Source: Magallana gigas
Taxonomy: Eukaryota
Length of the DNA: 64,000 bases
Direction of reading: 5' to 3'
Assembly (NCBI RefSeq): GCF_963853765.1
Contig: NC_088854.1
Location: 36,952,001-37,016,000 of the forward strand
In this document: positions 7,019-37,522 of the stretch, one piece after another
Layout of the letters: the number at the start of each line of letters is the position of its first letter
Position numbering within the stretch: position 1 is the first letter of the stretch
Translations under genes and position numbers: made by a program
Notes under the pieces: generated by a model
Seen by the model: the letters and a program-made list of their open reading frames with translations, nothing else
The model's database searches: none
What the model was told of the DNA's origin: nothing

Positions 7019-10000
7019 ATGACCGTCAAAATAGGCGTATGTTCTTACAAAAAGTAAGTTCTATATATTTATATTTAAATTCCATTCAAATACGTTAACT
7101 TTCATTTGGGGACTTATAATCCTTTTCAGATTCAAAATGAATATTCATATTCTATAAATAATTATTTGCTTAACCAAATAAACAATTGTGTTCATGAAAT
7201 AGTTTTATAAGGGACAATCCAGATAATTTGTTTTTATCTTACTGTTCTAAAAAAGATTTTAAAGAGTCGTTTTTCATTTTTGTTCCAATTTTGACCTCAA
7301 TGTCGAGCAACTTTAAAACTAATTCGTAGTTCAAGTAATGCTAAGTCGGTCACAATTAAAAGTATCGAAATTGCAATTTTAAATACTACCAAAAAAATAA
7401 TAATTGTATAATAATATAAAAAAAAAATTGAAATTCATGTAGTGATATCAAACAAAAGCATTTAAGAAAAAAAGTAATGAAAATGATTTAAACATATTAT
7501 TCAATTCGAGAAGGTGATGTTTAATTAACTAGTACTGCTCAATGTACAGGAAGTATTGTTTATATTTTCTTTTAGTGATAAGCCTGTGTGCTGCACATAT
7601 TACCATCTAAAAGACGGAATATGTACAGGTAAGAAATAATATCTTAAAGGGGCATGGTCACGATTTTGGTCAAAAATTATTTTTCCAATTTTAATTTTTC
7701 CAATTTTAATGTTTACAATGCTTCATTAAGGCAGTTTTAATAGGCAACCATAATTTGAGTGTCATTCGTTGAGTTATAAGTGAGTTACAGAGTTTGAAAT
7801 TCTTTGCTATGTAAACAAAGCGTTTGTTTACATTTTGAATGTTGAAGTGAAAATTCCTTTTTTAGACATAAAATGAATGTGTTAAACATTAGGAACTGTT
7901 TATGTTGGCTTAAAATGAATAAAAAGATATACAAATCAGATTTTAAACGTTTTTTATTGGTATATTAAACATATGTAAACAAAAACAGGAAACGAGCCTT
8001 GTTTACACAACAAAGAATTGCAAGCCCTGTATCCTGCTTATAACTCTACGAATGACTCTCAAATTTCATTTGATCATTAAAAATGCATTCTTAAAGCATT
8101 TTAAATAATAAAAAACACAAAAATAGAACTTGACCCAAATCGTGACCATGCCCATTTAATTATATACATACATACACCTATCAGCGAAGAGCAAGTGATT
8201 TTGACAGTAAAAGTCCAGGGAGTTTACTATTTTTTCTATACCCGGAGAATTTAACAAGAAAAAAAAAATTAAATCTGACAACTTTTTTTTTCATTCGGAG
8301 ATTCTTGGACCACCACGCTTAATTTTACAACACCGTCACTTGTTACTCTCACGTTGTTTGCAAAACAGATTTCTTGTAAATTTTTTATCTTTCGCCATGT
8401 TTTTTTTAACCTGACAATGGGTGTTTTAAAACACAACCTTTTGTTAACCTTTAAAACATCAAATTCTCACATGATTTCTTGTTCATTACGGATATATTCT
8501 CTTAATTCTTTTACATATCAAGTTTTTGTTGTTCTGATTTGTCTTTTAAAAATTGTTGTCAAATGACAATAAATGCATAATTACAATACCTTTATCTAAT
8601 CAAACTATCCCAAAAGTGTTCAGATCTTTCTTTTTACATACAAAAATGAAAAATGTCCCAAACATTTTTTTAAAAAATACTGGTTTATAAAAGTTCCAGA
8701 AAACCCATATCAATATTTGAAAGCATTTATCGATTTATTCTTCTTAGAACAATGAAATTATGTTTCAAAAATATACTAAATCATTCCTTTTTATCTTATA
8801 AGTACGGTGTCTTATATTGAAACGATTCACAGAGGATTTGAATTTCTACTACACCTTCTTTTGGTGATTCATATGGGCATGGCACTAACGCGGTTTCTGC
8901 AATGATCGTTAGACCTTCACAGCCCGCATAAATCATCAAAGATAGCATTTTTTGTTTATTTTCACATCTTTCTTTCTTAAAACAAATATTGCTTTCAATG
9001 GTCTAGAGAAGGACTTAGATGCATTTTCTATGGTTTGTGTGAACTTTTTGTTAGTTGTGACGTATGAGTAGTCAATGAATGGACAAATTACACTAACCAA
9101 AGGTGATTTTGAATGTCAAATTTAATCAGTAATGATATCTAATTCAGAAAATGTCAGGGATATGTATTGGAAATACAGAAAAGGCAAACAGATATGCTTA
9201 ATCTAGACATGAAACCCATTTTAAAATTTAAGCTATAAAAAAGACTGGTCATATTATTTTATACAAAAACCCAGTAAATGCTTTAAATCGGCATAAATTA
9301 TTATACTGGTATTAAAGAAACGTCACATAAAAAAAATCTATACATTTTCTTTTCTGGCATATACTTTTTTAATTATAATGCTTCAATACAAAGAGTTTAT
9401 TTATCACATTTGTGCATACACAGAATCAACAAATCAGTCTACAGCACAGAAATCTGAACAGTCAGTACAGCCAACGATACTAACAACAATAGCAACAACA
9501 GAACCTCGACTCGTGATGACAAAACGGTCTTCCTCAATGCTAAAAACCAACACCAAAACGGGGACTGCCGGATCGTTCAGTTCTACACACCTGGCTCTGA
9601 CGTCTCTAGAGGCAACTCCAATGCCTGGTTCTACGGGCGTTCCCCCAGAGCATACGTCACAGACGTCTGTCATTATCATCGTCGGAGGTCTAATATGTTC
9701 CTTTCTCATTTTCATACTAGGCATCCAAATCCACAGCAATTTTCTGAAACGGAAAAACGCATCTAGGCGAAAAATTGGTGAAAATCTTTTCAACCTCTAC
9801 GAAATGGAAGATGTCTACAACCACATTGAAGACGGTCATGTCTCAATGACCTCAGATAAGTACGATGTTGTTGCAAATCAGAATGATGCAGAGAGCTCGA
9901 CTTCTTCCAACATCAGTCCAAAATTTGACAAACCTAATAAAAACCTTGCTCCAACCTGCGTTTATTCAAAGACAACAAGGGATGGTAATATTTGTCATAG

Positions 10001-10214
10001 CCCTACCCAGAGCCAAGATAATTTATACATTGATCCAGTAGCCAAACTGTGTAATGGTTACACAGATCTTGTAGCATCACCACCAAGAAATGAAATGCAG
10101 GAAGAGACGGGTGAAAATAATCCAAAGGAAGCTTTTCAGAAAGTGGATTCAAGTCTGGTTAATGAAGAGCAAAACATACAAAAAGACAATTATCTCGATG
10201 TAGTACAACAATAA
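7019..10214 (+). CDS. MEGF10/SCARF-like receptor paralog M (middle copy, lacks EGF exon). Exons 7019-7053, 7576-7628, 9424-10214; true 5' end uncertain
   Basis: In-frame splicing gives MTVKIGVCSYK-N-DKPVCCTYYHLKDGICT-E-STNQSTAQ..., then an S/T stalk, TM VIIIVGGLICSFLIFILGIQI and a Tyr-motif tail ending DNYLDVVQQ. The 53-nt exon has the same length and phase as the corresponding exons in A and B. Confidence 0.7.
7648..8155. mobile_element. Non-autonomous DNA transposon with TTAA target duplication (Kolobok-like)
   Basis: ttaa|aggggcatggtcacgattttggtcaa ... ttgacccaaatcgtgaccatgcccat|ttaa. About 26-bp TIRs, TTAA at 7644-7647 and 8156-8159, purine-purine 5' end as in Kolobok. Confidence 0.8.
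8858..8950. repeat. Degenerate palindromic end of the repeat family at 17078/46809/58918
   Basis: ctttt ggtgattcatatggg...ctaacgcgg...tgcaatgatcg...cccgcataaatcatcaaagatagcatttt matches the palindromic terminus of those copies. Confidence 0.55.
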
Positions 10215-11627: not shown

Positions 11628-11801
11628 NNNNNNNNNNNNNNNNNNNNNNNNNNNNNNNNNNNNNNNNNNNNNNNNNNNNNNNNNNNNNNNNNNNNNNNNN
11701 NNNNNNNNNNNNNNNNNNNNNNNNNNNNNNNNNNNNNNNNNNNNNNNNNNNNNNNNNNNNNNNNNNNNNNNNNNNNNNNNNNNNNNNNNNNNNNNNNNNN
11801 N
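11628..11801. other. Assembly gap (174 N)
   Basis: Run of N characters. Confidence 1.
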
Positions 11802-15300: not shown

Positions 15301-16215
15301 CGGGAAACATTATGATATAACATAACTTTTTACTGTATATTGACTAAGCATGTATATTTTTACTAGTATATGCACATCTATATAAACACAGAATCAACAA
15401 TGCAGACTACAGCACAGACATCGGAACAGTCAATACAGTCAACGATAAGTTCTACAACAGAAACTACAAAAACTCGACACATGATGGCAGAACGATCTTC
15501 CTCAGTGCTAAAAGCCACCACAAAAACGTGGACTGCCGCATCGCTCAGTTCTACATACCTGGCTCTACCGTCTCTAGAGGCAACTCGGATGCCTGGTTCT
15601 ACGGGCGTTCCCCCAGATCATACGTCACAGACGTCCGTCATAATTATCGTCGGAAGTCTTGTATGTTTTTTTCTCGTTTTGATAATAGGCATTCAACTTC
15701 ATAGCAAGTGTCAGAAACAAAAGAGCGTATCGGAGCGCAAAAAAGGAAGGAATAACGCAAGTCTTTATGATATTGCAGACATTTACGACGAAATAGAAGA
15801 CGAACATGTTTCCACAGTGACAAAAAAGTACGAAATTATTGCAAACCGAAGCGAGCCAAATTACAGAAGTCCAAAACGTATCGACACTGATGCAAGTTTT
15901 GTTCCAACTTGTTCAAGTTCTAATTTGTACTTAGACGTTGCAAAAGATGGCTGTCCTGAAATTCCTGATTCGCTGCAGAATAGCTGTGAACCTCTAACTC
16001 AACCTGAATCATCCTCATTTGATGATTCAAGTCAAAATGAATGTGAACCTGTTCATGAGTCTAACTCTTCGCCGGCTGAGATATACCCACAGAGCCCTGG
16101 CGATACAGGCTATCTAGAACCTATGCGGCCAATAGACACAAAATCAGGCATTTCTGACACTCTACCTGACCATTCATCATCGTATTCGACATATTTAGAT
16201 GTAGTATTTAAGTGA
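12093..16215 (+). CDS. MEGF10/SCARF-like receptor paralog B (most complete). Exons about 12093-12132, 14384-14436, 14686-14808, 15392-16215; signal-peptide exon not identified
   Basis: In-frame splicing gives [80 protein letters not shown]..., then [23 protein letters not shown] and a tail with [27 protein letters not shown]. The donors and the three downstream acceptors are canonical; the first acceptor is uncertain. Confidence 0.8.
12244..12330. repeat. (TA)n microsatellite
   Basis: About 43 uninterrupted AT units. Confidence 0.98.
13454..13827. mobile_element. Insertion with a 135-bp near-perfect palindrome (13465-13599); non-autonomous element, possibly Crypton-like
   Basis: atagtgcctgtttgggagggtaacagttgaaattgacaccccgagaaaaccattgtcaacc-gacgcgaagcggag-gttgacaatggttttcgaggggtgtcaatttcaactgttatcctcccaaacaggcactat. 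Absent at the paralogous site in copy 1 (about 875). The superfamily is a guess. Confidence 0.7.
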
Positions 16216-25026: not shown

Positions 25027-27331
25027 ATTCACTAGTAAACACTGACAAATGAACTGACAAATGAAAAGTTAGCATGCTATAAGTTTTTAAATCTAGTGAT
25101 ATCATGTATATACATTTGCAGAAGAGGACCGCGGACTGGTGGTCTCCTTACTCCCCGATCACGTCAGTGAGATAGTCACATTTCCCGGCAGGGTAGACAA
25201 CTTTGTGAACTCTAAAGACACGACGGATGACAAATCAGGTCACCGGTTTTTGTATTTCTTCGGTCGCACGGACGTTCTTAGTATGGCGTGTGACCCATGG
25301 AATCATTCCATGTATGTTCTGGATGGTCTGTCCCAGAGTCTCTACAAGATGCACCATTTCAACATCTGGATGAATGATACTGAGAGAAACGTGACCCTCA
25401 TGCATAAGGGGGTGTCGCACTCCGCTACATCCCAGATAGCGTTCGATTGGCTTTCTCGGAACATCTATTGGACAGATGACTATTACAATTGGATTGGTGT
25501 ACAGCCCGTCGATACCGAGGATAAGACTATGTACAAAATTATCATGCACGATGGACTCTGGTCCCCGCTAGCTTTGAGTTTGGACCCTATTAAAGGGTAA
25601 GTGAGCGAAATCTGGTCATCAAATTGCTTCGAGATTTTCACTAATTATAAAAACAGTTATGAATGTTTGATCTATTTTCAGATATTTGTTTGTTGCTGAG
25701 CATGGTGCCAATACGGTTATAGAGCGTGCCGATCTGGCCGGCGAAAACCGGAAGACCATCATTACCTCGGTTTCAAAAGTCCCTGACATAGTGGTGGATA
25801 CAGAGGAAGAAAGGATCTACTGGATAGACATCGGCAGGAATGCTCTAGAAACGGCCAAATATGACGGCACCGACAGACGACTGGTGCGGCGCTCCACCAA
25901 TATCTACATCATGATGAGTGGACTCACTCTGTACAAGGTCTGGCAACTTTTACTTTTGGGGAAGAAACCCAAATTAAAATCCATCAAAAAATATATGTAT
26001 GGGAAATCTTAAGTATTCACTTCAAATGATAGATGTATTGAATCTCGATCCATCAAACTTCAACTTCATGGAGAAAAAAACAATATGTAATTTAAATTGT
26101 TTGCTTGATATCTTATTTCAGGATGTGGTGTGCCTAACAAAGTTTCAGGAGAATGAGGTTTTGTGTCTGGACAAAAGAAGCGGTTCCGTGGTGTGGTCTA
26201 CCACTTTTGCGACTCAGCAGCCCTGGAGTGTGGAGGTGTATGACAAAGATCTACAGAAAAGAGTTCCCCGTACGTCGCCCCTTAAAATCTACCACACGAT
26301 TAAGATACTATAATGTACAAATATTATGCAACATTTGTTTTGATAGATGATCATAATTTCAAAAAATTTCCATGATATGAAAGCTAATTAAAGAATATCT
26401 TTTTTTTTCAGACGAATGCGAAAAGAAAGGTTGCAGCCAATTTTGCGCAAATACCCCGACTGGTGCTAAATGTCTTTGCAAAGAAGGACAAGAACTTGAC
26501 ACGGACGGTAAAAGCTGTAAAGGTAAATCAGGTCTTGTAACGCGTGAAACAAGAAAAATGATGAATCGTATGTTTGTTATTATCATTTTAATAACATCGC
26601 GATTAGGAAAAAATTTGTGGTCAGCCTGTCTGTAGTATAATCCCAACTTTACATTGTTTCATTTCAGTCTCTCATACATTGTATGGTAAAGGGCTCTTGG
26701 TAGCCAATGGTACAGACTTGTGCATGCTGGACATCCGGGTGATTACGGGTCATGAAAGCGATGCCCGGTGCTTCCTTTTCTGGAAACACAATATCACTCA
26801 CCTAGCTGTCGACGCCAACCAGAACAAGATTTATTTCACGGACGACGTAAGCAGGAGGATCCAGAAACACGACATTGTACTCAATGTCACTTCCATCATA
26901 GCAACTACATCCTCAGTATCTGGTATATATAAATATGTTGTTTTCTAAGAATCTCATAATACGTTTTATGTTTTCCCCTAGAAAAATTTATTTAAAACCA
27001 CTGTATTGTGTAAGTTGATTTATATATACAATTTAAAATTTTGCTCCTTTTCATTAATTTACACTTTCTTTTTTCTCCAAACTTTAATTTAAATTTTAAA
27101 AGTTTAGAATTGTTCAATGGTTTGGCGTTGGTTTGTAGGACTTGTGTACGATTGGGTCAATGATGATGTATACTGGTCAGAGGCCGACTCCGGGAAGGTT
27201 AAGGTCACTACTACAGCAGACAACGTCCGACAAGAAGCCACCATTTTCTGGGGCCTTGATCGCCCCACATACCTTACAATTAACCCACATAACTCGTGAG
27301 TATGAAGATAACCAAACCCCCCACCCCTCTC

Positions 27332-27401
<70 letters not shown>

Positions 27402-30400
27402 ATATTATATATAAATTAATGGACGACACAAAAAATAATTTGACCGGAAGATTTAAGATGGGCGTTTTTATTCTGTTCACACTTCAGACTTCAATGTAGG
27501 ACAAAGAAACTAGATCATCTAATTCATTTATATCTAAAAGTAATTTGGTCAGTCGAGCGAAGCATCAACTGTCACATTCCCAAATCTAAATGAGTCGATG
27601 ATTTGCCATTGTACACTCCTCGCATGTCATTACATGACAGTTGACATTCATCACTCAAATAGATGATTTCTTAATAAGGGGAAAAACGGTTACACGTGAC
27701 GATTCTGTAGTAAATACGAATCTGTTCATTAGTTGAGAGATATTGTACGATTTAGTTTTCACCGAAACTATTCAGCTTTGGCAACACCTTGATAAATATG
27801 TTTATTTTAAAAAAGAACGAAAAGTTTTCTAATATGAGATATTTTAAGTGCATATAGGCCATTCATGTAAGACATTTTTTGTTGGAAGTAAGTTAATGAA
27901 TGAAGAACTTTAAAAAGAAGAAGACTTAAAACTATGATGAATTTCAATATTTTAGGTCATTGTACTGGATATCAAATAAAAACGGACAATACAGTATTGA
28001 GGGCGGGAGCTTTGACGGAATGAAACGATGGAGAATAGCGGAGAAAGCCACACTCCAAAGCCCATCTGGATTATTTTATGATTATTCATACAAAAAGTAT
28101 GTACGCACCTATCCACAGAAATCAGAGTACCACCAGAGTACCACCATGTACTTTGACAATTATATCTGACATATATGTTTACTGCTGACTGACATAAATT
28201 ATTTCGGTAAAATACTATCTGAATTTTGCAGGCTATTCTTCATTGATAAAGGGGAGCTCAAAAGTATACTTCCAGACGGGAGTAGCCTTTTAGCTTTGAA
28301 TTCCGTAGGAAGCGACAGCAAGGTTGTTGTATATAAGGTAAGTTTTACAGACGCTTTACTACAACACTGTGGTTCCTCTCACTAACGTTCAAAATGATGT
28401 TCATTGAGCTTTTTTTGTCCTTACAGGATTATGCTCTTGTTACTAATATCAAGAATTCTGTTCGAACACTCAACATCCACACGAAAGCTATGCAGGGTTC
28501 TTTAAATCTAACAAACGTTCAGAAAATTTTGGACATTGCAGTGTTTGATAAAAGCATTCAACTGACAGAGAAATGTGAGTATAAGAACGTGAATCTATAT
28601 TTAAAAAAAAAGTTTCTTGCTTGTTACTTGTAAGGTTGAAAATTAAAATTATTTAAATTACTTGTAATTTCTCAGCTCCTTGCATGGTCAATAATGGAGG
28701 ATGTGAACATATATGTACCGTAGACACAGGAATGAAGAAATGTCGCTGCGGGTTTGGATACACTCTCAAATCAGACGGACTCAATTGTTCAAGTAGTAAG
28801 GGAGATTAGTTGTTCTTTTTATATCGATAAAAGCAGGGTCTTTATGGAATCCACTCATTGAAGTTTGCACATGGTATTGTTAACTTGCATTTTCGTTTGT
28901 TTATTTACAGTTCCAATTATGGAGGACTTTGCATTGACAGTAGACTACACTCATGGAATACTCTATCAGGTCTCTCTTAGTAACGCCGAAGTGACGGCAG
29001 TGGATCTTCCGCCGCCTAACTACCCAATGAGCGCTGCGTACGACGCTAAGCGTCACCGCGTGTACTGGACAGACTTCCAGCGATACCAGATTCTGGAGAG
29101 CACGATCTGGGGCAAAAATAAAACAGTCGTCTTTAACACAGGTCAGTCACACTTGGAAAAGTAAAATAGATGGGAGGGGTAAGGGTGTTTGTTTTGTTTT
29201 GATTTTGGTTTTGGGGGTTGGGGTGGAGGAGCATGTATATTCTACTGAAAGGTATTGATACGTGTTAAAGTGAGCAGTTGATAGTTTAAGATATGCTGAT
29301 AACCTAATGAACCGTCTTTTTGTAACTTTCAGGGTCATACATTCCCGGTTCCATTCAGGTTGACTCATCCACGGGAAATATCTACTACGCCGCCACCACC
29401 TTTGACTTTATGAAGGGTGTGACGTCACATATCGCGGTTGTACGACCAAAGAGTGAGCAGAACAAAGTGGTGATCTCGCAGTTAGAAGTGGTCAAAACCA
29501 TTGCGCTGCATCCCCAGAAAGGGTAGGGAATTGAGTGTTAAGAATTTATGCTACAAATGTACAGATTCCAAGCTCATGTAGTTCATTATTTAGTGTGAAT
29601 AAAACCCAAATCATTTATGAATACATATATAGCACACAGATGTCTTCAAGATAATAGCGACAATTTCTTTTCTCCATCATTTTTCTGGATACATTCTTAG
29701 TGTTGTCTTTGCTGTAGATGGCTTTACTGGATTGACAAGGGAGGTGCCCAGTACACGGCTTATATCGGGCGAGGCGCCATGGATGGCGACAGTCGCTCTT
29801 TCTTCGTGTCCTCCAATTTGTTTAGCCCCACCGGTTTAACTGTTGACTACCAAGGTGAGTGTTACCCATTGGATATGAAAATCTTAACAAATTAAATTGT
29901 GATTTTAAACCAAAACCCAATTCTACGGCGAGTTTCAAAAGTTGCCCCGATGTTAAGCATCATCCTTTTTATATTTCAGGTGATAAGTTATACTGGTCTG
30001 ATAGTTACATGAATACAATCAATTATATTGGTTTGGACGGCACCAACCGAGGGGAACTGACCCATGATCCTCGTGCAGATATTATGCATATTGCAATATT
30101 TGGATCCCATTTGTACTACACTGCTGTGAACAGGCAGTAAGATATACAACACATTTCTTAGTGAAAAAATACCGAATAGAATATATTTTTATTTTATTTT
30201 ACACTTCATGTAATTAACTTATGTCAAAAATGTAACTAATTTATATATAATTACAGGTTCATCACTAAAGTGAACAAAGAGACGGGAACTATTTCTTCTT
30301 GGATGAGTGAAACGCCGGAATTCGGACGTTTGGAAACATTGGACATATATCCAGGAGACCCCATGCCAGGTATGTAAAATATTATCAAAGGTTAATACCC

Positions 30401-32888
30401 CCTCCCTTCCAAATAAATAGGATCTATCAAAATTGGTCGATATATTGATAAATCCCTCCGTTCAAGACTTTGTAATTGGTCTCTTTCTTAATATTTGCCA
30501 TTGCTATTGTTTTCAGTTAACGAAAAATGTGCCGTAAATAATGGTCTGTGTAGTACGTTTTGTTTACCAACTCCGTTCGGTCGGACGTGTGCTTGTGAGG
30601 AAGGAGTTCTATTGGAGAAAGATGGCAGAACGTGTAAAGGGGGTGAGTCCTTAGTCTTCAGATTTATGTGGTCAACACTGCGAAAGGAAAGCATGTTGGT
30701 TTCCACGAACGGTTTTAGCTTAGTTAACAGTCCTGAATTATAAATAGTTTCTTCTATATATGCGTAAATGCAAATATGTTACCCAGAGTAAATGAGGTCA
30801 CTCAATTCCAGGAAAATACGTGCTACGTTGTTTGTTATCCTATATTTCCTTGTAAATTTCCTGGGTTGGATATAAATATAGAAGTCTAGTTTAAATCTAT
30901 AGTTAAATGATTAAAAGTGTATCAAATTGTTGATCTGTGAATCAGTGTTATTCACGGTATACAGATTATTATGGTTCCAAGGTTAGGAAGTATCCTCAAT
31001 TATCGAAAATAACAATTGATCGAAACTTCTAGATTGAACAGCTCAAAAAATATAATTATAAAATTATTGTGCAATGATATAGTTAAGATCTACATCCTTG
31101 ATATTGATAGTTAAAATACAAACTATCTAAGATACAATGATATTTTTTTTTCTATAAAAGTTCATTCTTCAAACTTAGGTTTGTTTAACTGAAAAGGTGC
31201 AATTACATTTTTTTTTAATTTGAAAAATGTAATAAGACAGCAATTAAGAAAACTTGTTAAACATTGTGTAAATATTTGTCATTTTGCACAAGATTTTGAA
31301 TTCATGCTTCAGTCAAGAAGTGTAACCAGACTGTTCCAAATGGGGGGTTTGACGTGGAGTGCAGCGGTTACCTAGGAACCACGTGCAAGTATCACTGTTC
31401 CCAAGGTTACATCCCAGCAATGGCGAACCAAGAGTTACACTGTAGCTACAATGGAGACTGGGGTGTTCGCATGGAAAAACTCTGTGAGTACAAGTTTAGT
31501 TCTGATTGGGAAACTAAAACATGCAACTTCTAGTATAGTTAGAATTGTTTCTTAGCCATTATTTACATCAAATATTGCATGCTTTTCATCTAGAATGATA
31601 CCACAGCCCCATAATGCAATGACCTGCATACGTGATTACTGAAAAAATTAACAAAATGTCTTATTTAATGTGCATATTAACGAAAGAAATGTGAAATCTT
31701 GTATCTTTTTGATGTCTATCAATAACTTATTGTTCGACAAAGACGTGTATCACTCTGCATGCACATCACGGATTTTACCTAATAAAAGGAATATGAATAA
31801 GTAGTTGAAATTTTAAAAAAAATCAGAATGAACATTTATAACATTTCAAGATTATTTACTGCTATGTGGTCTTTGAAGTCAATTGTTCAGTATGAATGCA
31901 TTCATGTGACGAGACCGTATCGTGTTGATACATAGTCATGTACATGTATGTTTATTAATAATGCATGTGCTTGCCTAAGTCTGCCAGCCGTTTCTGATTT
32001 GTTACATACTTTGACCTCGTCAGCTTCGTTATGTTCTGTGACGGTTTTTTTCTAGGACAGTGCACTTAAAATAACGCTATCTGTACTTTTCACAGGTGAA
32101 CCTTACGGTCCCGCTAGGGCCGATTTCTCCACAGAGTCTCGTGAACTAGACAGGGCGGCCCTCGGGGGGATCCTGGGAGCGGTCATCTTCGTCCTTCTCG
32201 CCGCCATTGTCGTTATAATCCTTGTATTATACAAGAGGTACAAACATAATTACATACATCTTGTTTGTTTTTGTTTCAAAAACGGAATAACTTTTTAAAA
32301 CACCCAAATTAAACACAACTTTGCCATAAACTCAATGTCGGTTACCAACAAGTGATTAACATCAAATCTCTCTGAAAACCGTGGTTTGTTACGTTATTAT
32401 TGGGGTTGTTCTGAATTTTAAATACCATATTTCAATATCACATGCATAAATGATAATATATTCATGTACCATTATAGACCTAGCACTAAATTTCATATTT
32501 CACCAAAACAGTTCCAAAGTAGTCGGACAGCATGAATAAACACGAAGATTTAGACCTACTATAATATGTAAAAACAATCTCGTATATTAATTTATTTTTT
32601 TTTAACCATTTCTACCTTATACACATTTGCAGATTATATATTTTCTCTTGCAGACGATCGGGTATGTTTGCTCACGCAAAGTTTGTTAACGCTCCAAATG
32701 TACAGCTAAATCCATCTAATGCCGAGAAGATAGACGAGAAAGACCTCTCCAATGGGAAGGATCACAGCAACGGAACTTTGAATGGAACTATGGGAACTAG
32801 CAACCCAGTGTACGAATACAAAACCGACACAAACAATTCCAACAGTTCTCATCACGTCTACACGACATTGGATATTCAGAAAATGTGA
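22390..32888 (+). CDS. LDL-receptor-related (LRP-like) type I membrane protein, about 1160 aa: SP-(YWTD propeller-EGF)x3-Sushi-TM-NPxY tail. 20 exons: 22390-22453, 25122-25596, 25682-25937, 26122-26269, 26412-26522, 26668-26922, 27139-27295, 27956-28096, 28232-28337, 28427-28574, 28676-28795, 28911-29141, 29333-29522, 29718-29854, 29980-30136, 30257-30369, 30517-30642, 31313-31483, 32096-32237, 32654-32888
   Basis: All junctions are GT-AG and phase-compatible; the exons sum to 3483 nt. Signal peptide MALVWKILFYFTGLLIAVTCQ. Motifs IYWTD, IYWID, IYFTD, VYWSE, VYWTD, LYWID, LYWSD. Three EGF exons (e.g. CAVNNGLCSTFCLPTPFGRTCAC). TM ALGGILGAVIFVLLAAIVVIILVLY; tail contains NPVY. Confidence 0.92.
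24958..25023. repeat. (CT)n microsatellite
   Basis: Uninterrupted CT run in intron 1 of the LRP-like gene. Confidence 0.97.
27336..27396. repeat. (CT)n(CA)n compound microsatellite
   Basis: Intronic compound dinucleotide run. Confidence 0.97.
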
Positions 32889-33563
32889 TCACGTGACTCT
32901 CGGGGTAGTATCATTCCAGATTTTGAAATCCATCTATCAGGAGACTGAAATCCACTTATACTAATGTGTCTCTAACTGGAGCAGTTCTTCAAAGAATGGT
33001 TAGGACATCGCATCTTTTCAACATTGAAATGGACATTATTAATAAGTGTTGATTTTCAGATGTAAGATTTTTTTTTATTGTTGATGTTTATATGGTGCTG
33101 AGGGATTGATTTTTAATATCCTGAAATCTAGACAAATAAATACATGATTGTATGTTTAATATAGTGTACGAGGACTTTAGGTTGATGTTTTATGGTTAAG
33201 AAGGCGGCCATTTTTTCTGCTGAATACTTTGGCATGTATATATAATGAACTTGGAGCAAATTCTTGGAATCGTTTGGTGAATGAACGAAAGGCCATTGTC
33301 GGTGATAACACGCCTAACATATACATGATGACAACATTCCGAGGAATAAGAAATGACCAGAACGGCCATTGGCTGCTACGTCATAAAAGAAGCCAATTTA
33401 TAATCACTGCCGTGAAGTTAATAACTTCGAGGAAAACAAAAGTCGACAAATACGGTTTTTACTTTTTTACTTTGTTTATTTGAAATAATCACTCAACAGC
33501 ACAAAAGAAGATGCATGCCCGAAAGTATAATTCGTACAAATGGTTTTATGGGTAAATAAAGTT

Positions 33564-34185
33564 TTAATGTTCAAATTGTCCTGTCGTTGACCGTATAAAA
33601 TCCTGTAGGAGGTGGAAAGCACTTGGGAAGGTCGGGCTCGCGGTCCGGCGGGGGCGGGAGTTGGACGGAGAGTTCCGGCGATCTATCGGAATCAGGGGCA
33701 CCAGAAGTAAGTCGCCGGCGACTATTGCCCCGCTCTGTGGCGCCGAGGGAAGAACCCATAAACTATGGTCTCTAGCTGAACTAAAGTCTCGAAAGGCAAA
33801 GAGAGCTCCTCCTAGGAAACGAATAATATATTATACGCTTTTGTAGCTTTGTTTAATTCACTAAAATATTTCTACATGGGTATTCTGTCAATTTTATTCA
33901 TATTTTTAACTTTTCTTTTAATTGTAATAGATGACCGATAAAAAGAAAATAATTTTCATTCCTTTTATGGTTTGATAAAAATTCCTGGAAAGAATGATAA
34001 TCCTTTGACTAGTCTTCCGCTATAATCTTTTATCATATTCATAAACATATTATTGCATTTTCATTTGTCAACGATATCAGGTTTTTGGATGAAAACATAA
34101 CAGATGCCCTTAAAATAGTATTTGTTATTTCCCCTGTATACCTGTTATTTATCTACAACCCTGTACGTGTAACGAAGAAACCCAT

Positions 34186-34219
<34 letters not shown>

Positions 34220-34967
34220 GAAGGATAATTGTGTTTGCCAGGGGGGGTCCGAGGCATATTTTCGCGATAATTTTACTATGTAAATTTAATAAATTTTCAT
34301 TTTCCAGGGGGGTCGGGACCCTCCCGACCCCCCCCCCCCCCCCTCTAGATCCGCGCATGAAACCTAATGCTTTGAAAGTAAGTATCGTTGTAAATTTAAG
34401 CTGAAGAAATATGTATCAAACAATATATTATATTTATTTGTTTAATTAACAAAATGACATCATTTCTACATTAATTTAAGTTTCTCCTCTTTATCCTTTT
34501 ACATGTAAGAGATCAAGACTGCTTTCTACATTGTAAACTAAATACACGTTTCATATTAATTACACGGTTATCATAGAAACGCTTTATATATAAAATCCGT
34601 ACTCTTACAAATCATATAAAATATACTTTGGAACGTAAGTAATGAACGACTTAATCAATCTCTCTCTCTCTCTACCTCTCTCTTACCTCGGTTTCCACTG
34701 ACGCCGTGGTGGCTTATTCCAACGAATAAAAGCACAAGAAGAACTAAAAATTTCTCCATTTCACTAGTTATATCTGGACTCTGAAAACAAAATATTAGAT
34801 ATTGTTGCAGTGATTGTTTGCATTAATTAATTAATGAAATCATCCATTCATTCATTATTTGTCACAACTTGTCATAGAATGTTATCAGTCTTGCTTACTT
34901 AATTTTAACGAAGAATTATATTGCAGAAAGAGCATCCGAAATTCCCTGCACTACCTTTTGAGTTCAT
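33564..34967 (-). CDS. Putative 105-aa secreted prepro-peptide-like protein. Coding exons 34967-34955, 34743-34687, 33811-33564; probable 5' UTR to 35026 and an upstream exon ending at 35367
   Basis: Three GT-AG-bounded, phase-1-compatible exons give MNSKVLLVLLFVGISHHGVSGNRGGALFAFRDFSSARDHSLWVLPSAPQSGAIVAGDLLLVPLIPIDRRNSPSNSRPRRTASPTFPSAFHLLQDFIRSTTGQFEH*. There is an in-frame stop upstream of the ATG, a signal-peptide-like N-terminus, a GC-rich last exon, and AATAAA at 33480-33475. Confidence 0.7.
34183..34359. mobile_element. MITE with CATG termini and 5-bp TSD (AAACC)
   Basis: aaacc|catgcgcggatccaga ... tctagatccgcgcatg|aaacc. It lies in an intron of the minus-strand peptide gene. Confidence 0.85.
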
Positions 34968-37522
34968 GGATTGTAACTGGTCCAGCTAAGGTCGTGCCGA
35001 GTTATTTGTTGGGAACACGGGTAAAGCTGTATTGATTGATTGCATATCAATTACTGTATACTTATCTGTATAAGGGCAATAACCCTGTCAAAAAGGGTGT
35101 GATCTAGTGTGTTCTTTCTATCTCGATGTAATGAATATTAAGATAATTGTTTTGACCCGAACAACAGTTGCATAACACACGGTGTATCTATACACAATCG
35201 ATAAACAAGAAAACAATAAACATGTTATTCAATGCGATATTACAGTTCCGTTGAATCAAAGAAATCAAATGCATCTATAAGGCATGTACATACAATAATA
35301 AAATCGCGGAGCATTTGGCCTGATAACGTCTAACAAAAACATTAAAAAAATTACGATGTGCTTTACCTCAGGTTTGCCTGTCAAAACGCGAGGGTCGTGA
35401 TCGTCCGCGGGGGTGGCGTTGCATCATACTACTGCGAGTATACACATTGTGAAATGCATTAATAAAAACATAATGTGTGTTCAATGTATTTGTAAATTTT
35501 TGGGGGTTTGTACATTAAACTGAAAAACCGATTAAATACGTGAATATAATTCAGTTTCATTTTTTTGCTGGTATCCTCCACAGCGGTTTTCAGTTTGGTT
35601 TCCAGTTGAAAATATATACCTTAGTTTTATTTTTTTTTTTACCAACTATAGAAAGGGATTTGTTTCTCCTAGGGGTGTGATATATCTATTTTAATTACTT
35701 TGCCTAAATCCTTTACTTATTAATTCGCTAATTGTAAATAATAATGAAACTTTTATTTCTTTCAAATGTGAAAACGAAGTAAGACCAGACAAAATACGCC
35801 AGCTTTCTTATTCTTCATGTACCTTAATGATTTGCATGAATTTTTGCACATGCATCTTATGTTCAGAGTTTACCAAATTTTATATGACTTGTTTGAAATA
35901 AGTTGAATATTTCTTTTTTAATTGTTTACTTTTTTTATGAATACGACGTTGTGCTGTTCGCAGAAACTCCTGAAAATTTGCATGGACAATTAGATTGTTT
36001 TCATACTTATTGCATGAAATGAAACCTGATAATGAATATCGATAAATCTAACATATTAATATCTAGCAGAGGTAGGCGGAAAGAAAACATATAGATAAAA
36101 ATAATGGAAAACTAATTGAAGTTGATACCGATTTTAACTACTAGTATATGGGAATCGTATTTAGCAGAAGAGGATCTTCTAAGAATGCAATACAGAAATT
36201 AGCCGAAAAAGCATTATATAAAGTGTTAAAAAGGAGATTCCATAACCTTTCAATGCAAAGCATGTCAAATAGATTTTTTTGACAAAAATTTCTAGCCCAT
36301 ACTATTGTGTAGATGTGAATTGTGTTGTGTGGATGGGAATTTTTCAAACATTGCAATTATAGAAAGGATTTAATTCAAATTTTGTCAACTTTTACTCCAT
36401 TTAAAACAATCAGTTCCAGATTAAATGATGTATGGTGAATTTGGTAAATATCCATAGAAATTCAAATAAAACCACGCATGGTTTTTATATTGGACGAGAA
36501 TATTCGTAGGAAAGTATACAATAATCTATTATTTAGGCATTTGTAGGAATAAAGAAATGGGGGGGGGGGGGGGGGGCTTAATAAATTGGTTTGAAAGCAT
36601 GAAAACATTTTGAATAATTGTGGACAGTCTAATATTTGGATTGATCAACGAGTCGATACATACAAAATAGCGGAAATTAAAACTTACTTTAATTGATAAA
36701 TTCAAGCTTTAAATTATAAGAATAAATTATAAATTAGCGAGGAAAAATCAGATTTTGAGAATCATTTAAGACAGTATTAACAAAAAAGAAATGCAATTAC
36801 TTTTGTAGATTTCGAACTTATTATCAACTACCAATTGAAGTAGAAGATATATTGGGTAAATATTAGATTCTGTGCTTGTTGCAATCGACATGAAATTGGA
36901 AATTAATGTACTCCATCACTCTCTTATAGCTGTAATTCATTGCAACAAAAACGCGTTCAATTTTTATTAGAAAAAAAAAACTATCAAAATAAAAATGCTA
37001 CATGTATTAGTTTTGAATCAATAATGTCTGGTACAAAACGATCATATATTTTTTCGTTTTCAGTTCAGTGCCACGACGACAGCACTGTTTTCTTTGGAAA
37101 GTATGCCGAAATGCTCCCCCGGGTTTAGAACCTCCATACTTCATACTTGTATTTATGACGAGTCAAAGTTTATATTTATCACGCGCATGCGATGTTTATT
37201 AGTTAGTACTTGTACCATTGTACAATGATGTTGAGATTAAAATAAATGAATAAGTAACACCCCCTTCTTCTGGGAACATTTTCTTCTCCGGCATTCTTCC
37301 AAGCACATTAATTTTTTTTTTTTTTTGCTTTGGTATTTTTTTGTTTGGTTGGTTTTTATTTTAGAAAGAACAAAAATATTAGAATTTTTGTTTTTATTTT
37401 AAAATCATAATCAATCGCTGGACCTGAAAAAGGAAAAAAGAGGGAGGTATGGCGTTTTACGTACGACTTATCGAAAACGTCCAACTTTCACTTCAATATT
37501 TCCGGTTTTGCCACATCACAAC

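What the first reader, a model, noticed from the sequence alone, without database searches (positions are those of the whole stretch)
33564..35430. Hidden small gene encoding a secreted prohormone-like precursor with RR and RPRR cleavage sites
Seen in sequence: coding exons of 13, 57 and 248 nt on the minus strand splice in frame to a 105-aa protein that the ORF track misses. It has a signal-peptide-like N-terminus (MNSKVLLVLLFVGISHHGVSG), no Cys, a DRR site and an RPRR site, a Pro/Ser-rich spacer, and a final 26-aa segment TASPTFPSAFHLLQDFIRSTTGQFEH. An upstream in-frame stop, a probable non-coding first exon (donor at 35366) and a poly(A) signal about 85 nt after the stop complete the gene. 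Established: R-X-X-R and dibasic sites are furin/PC1/PC2 substrates in neuropeptide and hormone precursors. I do not recognise the sequence as any known molluscan neuropeptide. Inference: a possibly undescribed peptide hormone, neuropeptide or secreted matrix/defence peptide.
Basis: partly seen in the sequence, partly recalled or inferred. Interest (0 to 1): 0.85.

Follow-up and report, generated by a model that had tools for sequence, protein, structure and literature searches.

The report
Small secreted protein gene of oysters
This is a real Pacific-oyster gene, dropped from the current gene table, for a small exported protein kept across oysters and pearl oysters; its front half, not the hormone-like end piece, is what evolution has conserved most, and its job is untested.

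Summary
The gene is real, but the model needs a fix. The window is Magallana (Crassostrea) gigas. The protein is the older RefSeq prediction LOC105340373: 106 aa, two coding exons, start at 34759. The current assembly's gene table calls no protein here. Through OSTC/LRP synteny I found orthologues in C. virginica, a third Crassostrea-like genome, two Saccostrea genomes and Pinctada, plus the signal exon in Ostrea. All keep the signal exon and phase-1 intron. Exon 3 is under purifying selection (dN/dS 0.21). RPRR is kept in all five oyster sequences but not in Pinctada; DRR is not conserved. The most conserved part is a ~45-residue hydrophobic core before RPRR (62-74% identity in distant oysters). 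The 26-residue tail is 38-44% identical and has no amidation signal. No Pfam, PDB, Atlas or literature match; not in the published oyster neuropeptide catalogue. Best reading: an orphan secreted protein trimmed by furin in oysters, acting through its core. A tail-borne hormone is a weaker rival. The scan noted other orphan precursors elsewhere in this genome.

The parts
35014..35180 (-). Conserved non-coding element about 400 nt upstream of the ATG (probable promoter or 5' regulatory region)
   Evidence: Aligns in C. virginica, two Saccostrea and Ostrea at 397-434 nt before the ATG; not found in Pinctada
34781..34898 (-). Probable short 5'-UTR intron (strong donor at 34898, acceptor before 34780)
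   Evidence: A strong donor lies 108-139 nt before the ATG in the window, C. virginica and both Saccostrea; inferred, no reads
35366..35460 (-).
   Evidence: UniProt model K1QXJ8 splices this donor to 34780; the frame has a stop in this allele; no clear match in C. virginica
34955..34967 (-).
   Evidence: Not in the RefSeq protein; not seen in orthologues; would open a 20-aa upstream ORF
34687..34780 (-). Signal-peptide exon; CDS starts at 34759; 73 coding nt, phase-1 donor
   Evidence: orthologous exons of 70 nt (four oysters) and 100 nt (Pinctada), all phase 1
34694..34759 (-). Predicted 22-aa signal peptide
   Evidence: Hydropathy peak 3.7; hydrophobic core followed by Gly in all six species; SignalP not run
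33812..34686 (-). Intron between the coding exons; holds a polymorphic 176-nt MITE-like insertion at 34183-34358
33564..33811 (-). Last coding exon, 248 nt including the stop
   Evidence: Third-position-biased substitutions 21/14/42 and dN/dS 0.21 against C. virginica; other frames broken by stops
33687..33800 (-). Conserved hydrophobic core with three motifs (FAFxD, LWxxPSxP, GDxLLVPxxP)
   Evidence: 16 of the 17 invariant columns of the six-sequence alignment, Pinctada included
33645..33656 (-). Furin-type RPRR site
   Evidence: Invariant in five oyster sequences, absent in Pinctada
33567..33644 (-). 26-aa C-terminal tail with an amphipathic helix, near-neutral, no amidation signal
   Evidence: Helix in both low-confidence models; hydrophobic moment 0.57-0.69 in oysters
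33475..33480 (-). Poly(A) signal AATAAA
   Evidence: similar signals follow the stop in orthologues

Best explanation
A single-copy gene between OSTC and an LRP-like receptor encodes a 106-aa secreted protein of a family found in true oysters and pearl oysters. Shown: the gene, its frame, its selection and its orthologues. Inferred: the 22-aa signal peptide takes it into the secretory pathway. The working unit is the Cys-free, probably beta-stranded core of about 45 residues, which binds a partner or self-associates outside the cell, as a mucus, matrix or short-range signalling component of an epithelial or glandular tissue. In true oysters a furin-type convertase cuts at RPRR and removes the amphipathic tail. 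The tail most likely shields the hydrophobic core until export, rather than being the main product.
For: Frame and selection. Orthologues with the same exon structure. Invariant residues sit almost all in the core; core identity 62-74% vs tail 38-44%. RPRR fits the furin consensus RX[KR]R (established knowledge) and is invariant in oysters. The Pinctada orthologue keeps the core without any basic site, so the cut is dispensable for the family while the core is not. Both models put strands in the core and a helix in the tail, at low confidence.
Against: No expression, tissue or peptide data. The tail is still under purifying selection (pN/pS 0.14 between the two Saccostrea) and keeps P, S, L, S and a terminal FE, which would also suit a ligand. 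Structure models are unreliable (pTM 0.20-0.22). The shielding role is an analogy, not a result.
Confidence: 0.5

Rival explanations
1. A neuropeptide or peptide-hormone precursor: cleavage at RPRR releases the 26-aa amphipathic tail as a receptor ligand, in the manner of helical ligands such as CRF/ELH; the core is a pro-region.
For: Signal peptide, invariant RPRR in five oyster sequences, amphipathic tail with fixed positions; tail pN/pS below 1. A loose likeness to CRF-type helices was recalled from memory.
Against: Tail is the least conserved part; no amidation or pyroglutamate signal; DRR not conserved; no site in Pinctada. Tail and tail profile find nothing in PDB at E<=10 or Pfam. Not in the ganglion catalogue of PMC8398477 by accession, though that catalogue was built by homology, so absence is weak.
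Confidence: 0.27
2. An antimicrobial or defence peptide precursor whose amphipathic tail or core attacks microbes.
For: Small, secreted, lineage-restricted, furin-type site and an amphipathic helix, a layout seen in some oyster defence peptides (own knowledge).
Against: Tail net charge is 0 to -1 in Crassostrea and +3 in Saccostrea; no Cys; one copy in every locus read; purifying rather than diversifying selection.
Confidence: 0.1
3. Not a protein gene: a non-coding transcript or chance ORF, as the absence from the current gene table might suggest.
For: No protein called here in the current M. gigas, C. angulata, Saccostrea or Pinctada tables; no reads seen here.
Against: dN/dS 0.21 in this frame only; open frame, signal exon and intron phase kept from Magallana to Pinctada; C. 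virginica RefSeq has three protein accessions for it.
Confidence: 0.02

Closest known systems
LOC105340373 / XP_019927831.1 / K1QXJ8 (C. gigas) and LOC111126737 (C. virginica), uncharacterized predictions
   Same: The same gene; XP_019927831.1 differs from the window's 106-aa product at one residue.
   Different: Never named in the searchable literature; the Saccostrea and Pinctada orthologues are not in their gene tables; K1QXJ8 adds a 34-aa extension whose frame is closed in this allele.
Mollusc-restricted neuropeptide precursors of C. gigas (IWMPxxGY, GNamide, RTLFamide, GRWRN; PMC8398477)
   Same: Short precursors with a signal peptide and basic cleavage sites, restricted to a few bivalves.
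   Different: In most of those the mature, often amidated peptide is the conserved part and was seen by mass spectrometry. Here the conserved part precedes the site and nothing is amidated. No shared accession.
CRF / DH44 / egg-laying-hormone type helical peptides
   Same: An amphipathic helix after a furin-type site (resemblance from memory).
   Different: Shorter, unamidated, no Pfam or PDB match; site missing in Pinctada.
Lineage-restricted secreted shell, mucus and matrix proteins of pteriomorph bivalves
   Same: Small, secreted, domain-less, restricted to related families (own knowledge).
   Different: No low-complexity repeats or acidic tracts; no evidence of mantle expression or presence in a shell proteome.

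Membership tests
Neuropeptide / peptide-hormone precursor | N-terminal signal peptide | tested here: met
   Hydropathy and conservation in six species; SignalP not available
Neuropeptide / peptide-hormone precursor | Conserved convertase cleavage site | tested here: inconclusive
   RPRR invariant in five oyster sequences, absent in Pinctada; DRR not conserved
Neuropeptide / peptide-hormone precursor | Released peptide is the most conserved segment | tested here: not met
   Tail 38-44% vs core 62-74% identity
Neuropeptide / peptide-hormone precursor | Amidation or pyroglutamate signals (common, not universal) | tested here: not met
   None in any orthologue
Neuropeptide / peptide-hormone precursor | Neuronal or endocrine expression and detection of the mature peptide | not testable with these tools
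CRF / DH44 / ELH family | Match to the family profile or solved members | tested here: not met
   No Pfam hit; no PDB hit at E<=10
Cationic antimicrobial peptide | Clear positive net charge of the released peptide | tested here: not met
   Last 27 residues: 0, -1, 0, +3, +3
Shell matrix protein | Mantle expression and presence in the shell proteome | not testable with these tools
   No identifier hit in papers

The most novel reading that the evidence does not exclude
Founding member of an undescribed signalling family of oysters and pearl oysters, possibly wider: a Cys-free beta-strand core acts as the ligand or assembly unit, and true oysters added a furin cut that frees a second, helical product.
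Probability: 0.25. Interest if true: 0.6.

Novelty: new member of a known kind. Interest (0 to 1): 0.36.

Why it matters
It restores a conserved protein-coding gene that current oyster, Saccostrea and pearl-oyster gene tables miss, and defines a small secreted family with no known domain. It gives a short, makeable core and tail to test in a major aquaculture species. Without tissue or activity data it stays one of many orphan secreted proteins of bivalves.

Tried and rejected
The reason was not given as human-like, and the stretch is identical to an oyster chromosome. The spliced model was searched exon by exon; the joined search step was left out. The join was only translated in a local script, and whole-protein searches used ids the database returned. 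P0016 (bacterial-type repeat protein) rejected as a repeat artefact. No orthologue within 10 kb of OSTC in Tegillarca, two scallops or Dreissena, where synteny differs. Alternative frames of exon 3 rejected. Likeness of the core motif to cupin, LysM or SLBB ends and of the tail to glucagon or CRF came from memory and found no support.

Full report
Origin. Window 27523-49799 is 100% identical to record OY970746.1 of assembly GCA_963853765.1, Magallana (Crassostrea) gigas. The gene lies on the minus strand between an LRP-like receptor (plus strand, ending near 32957) and OSTC (37523-39799, plus strand).

Observation. The N-terminus is wrong. The acceptor at 34743 is weak. A strong acceptor opens an exon at 34780 whose own ATG at 34759 gives 106 aa in the same frame. 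A search with exon 3 returned exactly that protein, XP_019927831.1 / LOC105340373, and a 106-aa C. virginica protein, LOC111126737. The current assembly's gene table calls no protein in this gap, so the gene is predicted in old annotation and missing from the new one.

Is it coding? The C. virginica gene has the same two coding exons, the same phase-1 intron and the same neighbours. Exon 3 mismatches fall 21/14/42 on codon positions 1/2/3, and dN/dS is 0.257/1.2 = 0.21. The other two frames hold stops. A third Crassostrea-like genome, seen in sequencing contigs, shows the same third-position bias.

Orthologues by synteny. Protein databases gave only Crassostrea hits. I therefore fetched the OSTC region of other bivalves. 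Unannotated orthologues lie upstream of OSTC in two Saccostrea genomes (tblastn E about 1e-28) and in Pinctada (E about 1e-8), each with a signal exon ending in a phase-1 intron. Ostrea edulis has the signal exon; its last exon lies beyond the DNA held. None was found near OSTC in Tegillarca, two scallops or Dreissena, where neighbours differ. The Pinctada protein would score only E 0.08 in a library-size search, so a wider range is not excluded.

What is conserved. In six exon-3 sequences, 16 of 17 invariant columns lie in a core before the linker: FAFxD, LWxxPSxP and GDxLLVPxxP. Identity to the window protein in C. virginica and Saccostrea is 62-74% in the core and 38-44% in the tail; in Pinctada 41% and 13%. 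RPRR is invariant in the five oyster sequences but Pinctada has no basic site, and the DRR site is not kept. The tail is still constrained (pN/pS 0.14 between the Saccostrea pair, 0.4-0.6 across genera). It forms an amphipathic helix of near-zero charge and carries no amidation signal. Two AlphaFold models are low in confidence (pTM 0.20 and 0.22) but agree on strands in the core and a helix in the tail.

5' end. A non-coding element at 35014-35180 is kept about 400 nt before the ATG in all four oyster genera. A strong donor lies 108-139 nt before the ATG in four of five oysters (34898 here). The donor at 35366 may be an alternative first exon, since the UniProt model uses it.

Mechanism. Shown: a conserved secretory-type protein with a core, a polar linker and a helical tail. 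Inferred: export through the signal peptide and, in true oysters, furin-type cutting at RPRR. Because the core outlasts both the cut and the tail in evolution, I take the core as the working part: an extracellular binding or self-assembling unit, with the tail as a removable shield (0.5). The rival, a tail-borne neuropeptide or hormone, keeps 0.27; a defence peptide 0.1.

Known families. No match in Pfam, PDB sequences or the ESM Atlas. No paper names the gene. The visceral-ganglion precursor catalogue of PMC8398477 does not list it by accession, but it was built by homology.

Limits. The spliced model was searched exon by exon and the joined search step was left out. The N run at 11628-11801 was left as it is.

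Verdict. A real, under-annotated orphan secreted protein of oysters and pearl oysters; a new member of a known kind. The hormone reading is possible but not favoured. Interest 0.36.

Noticed in passing
window 34183-34358: 176-nt MITE-like insertion in the coding intron, with terminal inverted repeats and a 5-6 nt target duplication; absent at the same site in C. angulata.
   Followed up: partly
window 37523-39799 (+): OSTC gene, four coding exons, divergent from the gene studied and about 2.7 kb from its ATG; the pairing is kept from Magallana to Pinctada.
   Followed up: yes
window 25127-32957 (+): LRP-like receptor gene (about 1160 aa) convergent with the gene studied; kept in C. virginica, C. 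angulata and one Saccostrea locus.
   Followed up: partly
L009 1-7821 (-), Ostrea edulis: The called 171-aa gene starts inside what looks like an antisense retrotransposon fragment upstream of the true signal exon (5395-5326); probably a mis-extended model of the orthologue.
   Followed up: partly
L012 556-1098: A spliced OSTC contig continues into a Tim17-family ORF that does not map to this window: a chimeric contig or a distant read-through.
   Followed up: no
window 54399-56764 (+): Hsp70-family gene ending in a KDEL signal (BiP/GRP78-like).
   Followed up: no
window 9378-10214 and 15370-16215 (+): Two paralogous exons with a Ser/Thr-rich stalk, transmembrane segment and Tyr-bearing tail.
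   Followed up: no
window 39287-39353 and 39604-39670: 67-nt inverted repeat pair in the last OSTC intron, probably a small transposon.
   Followed up: no
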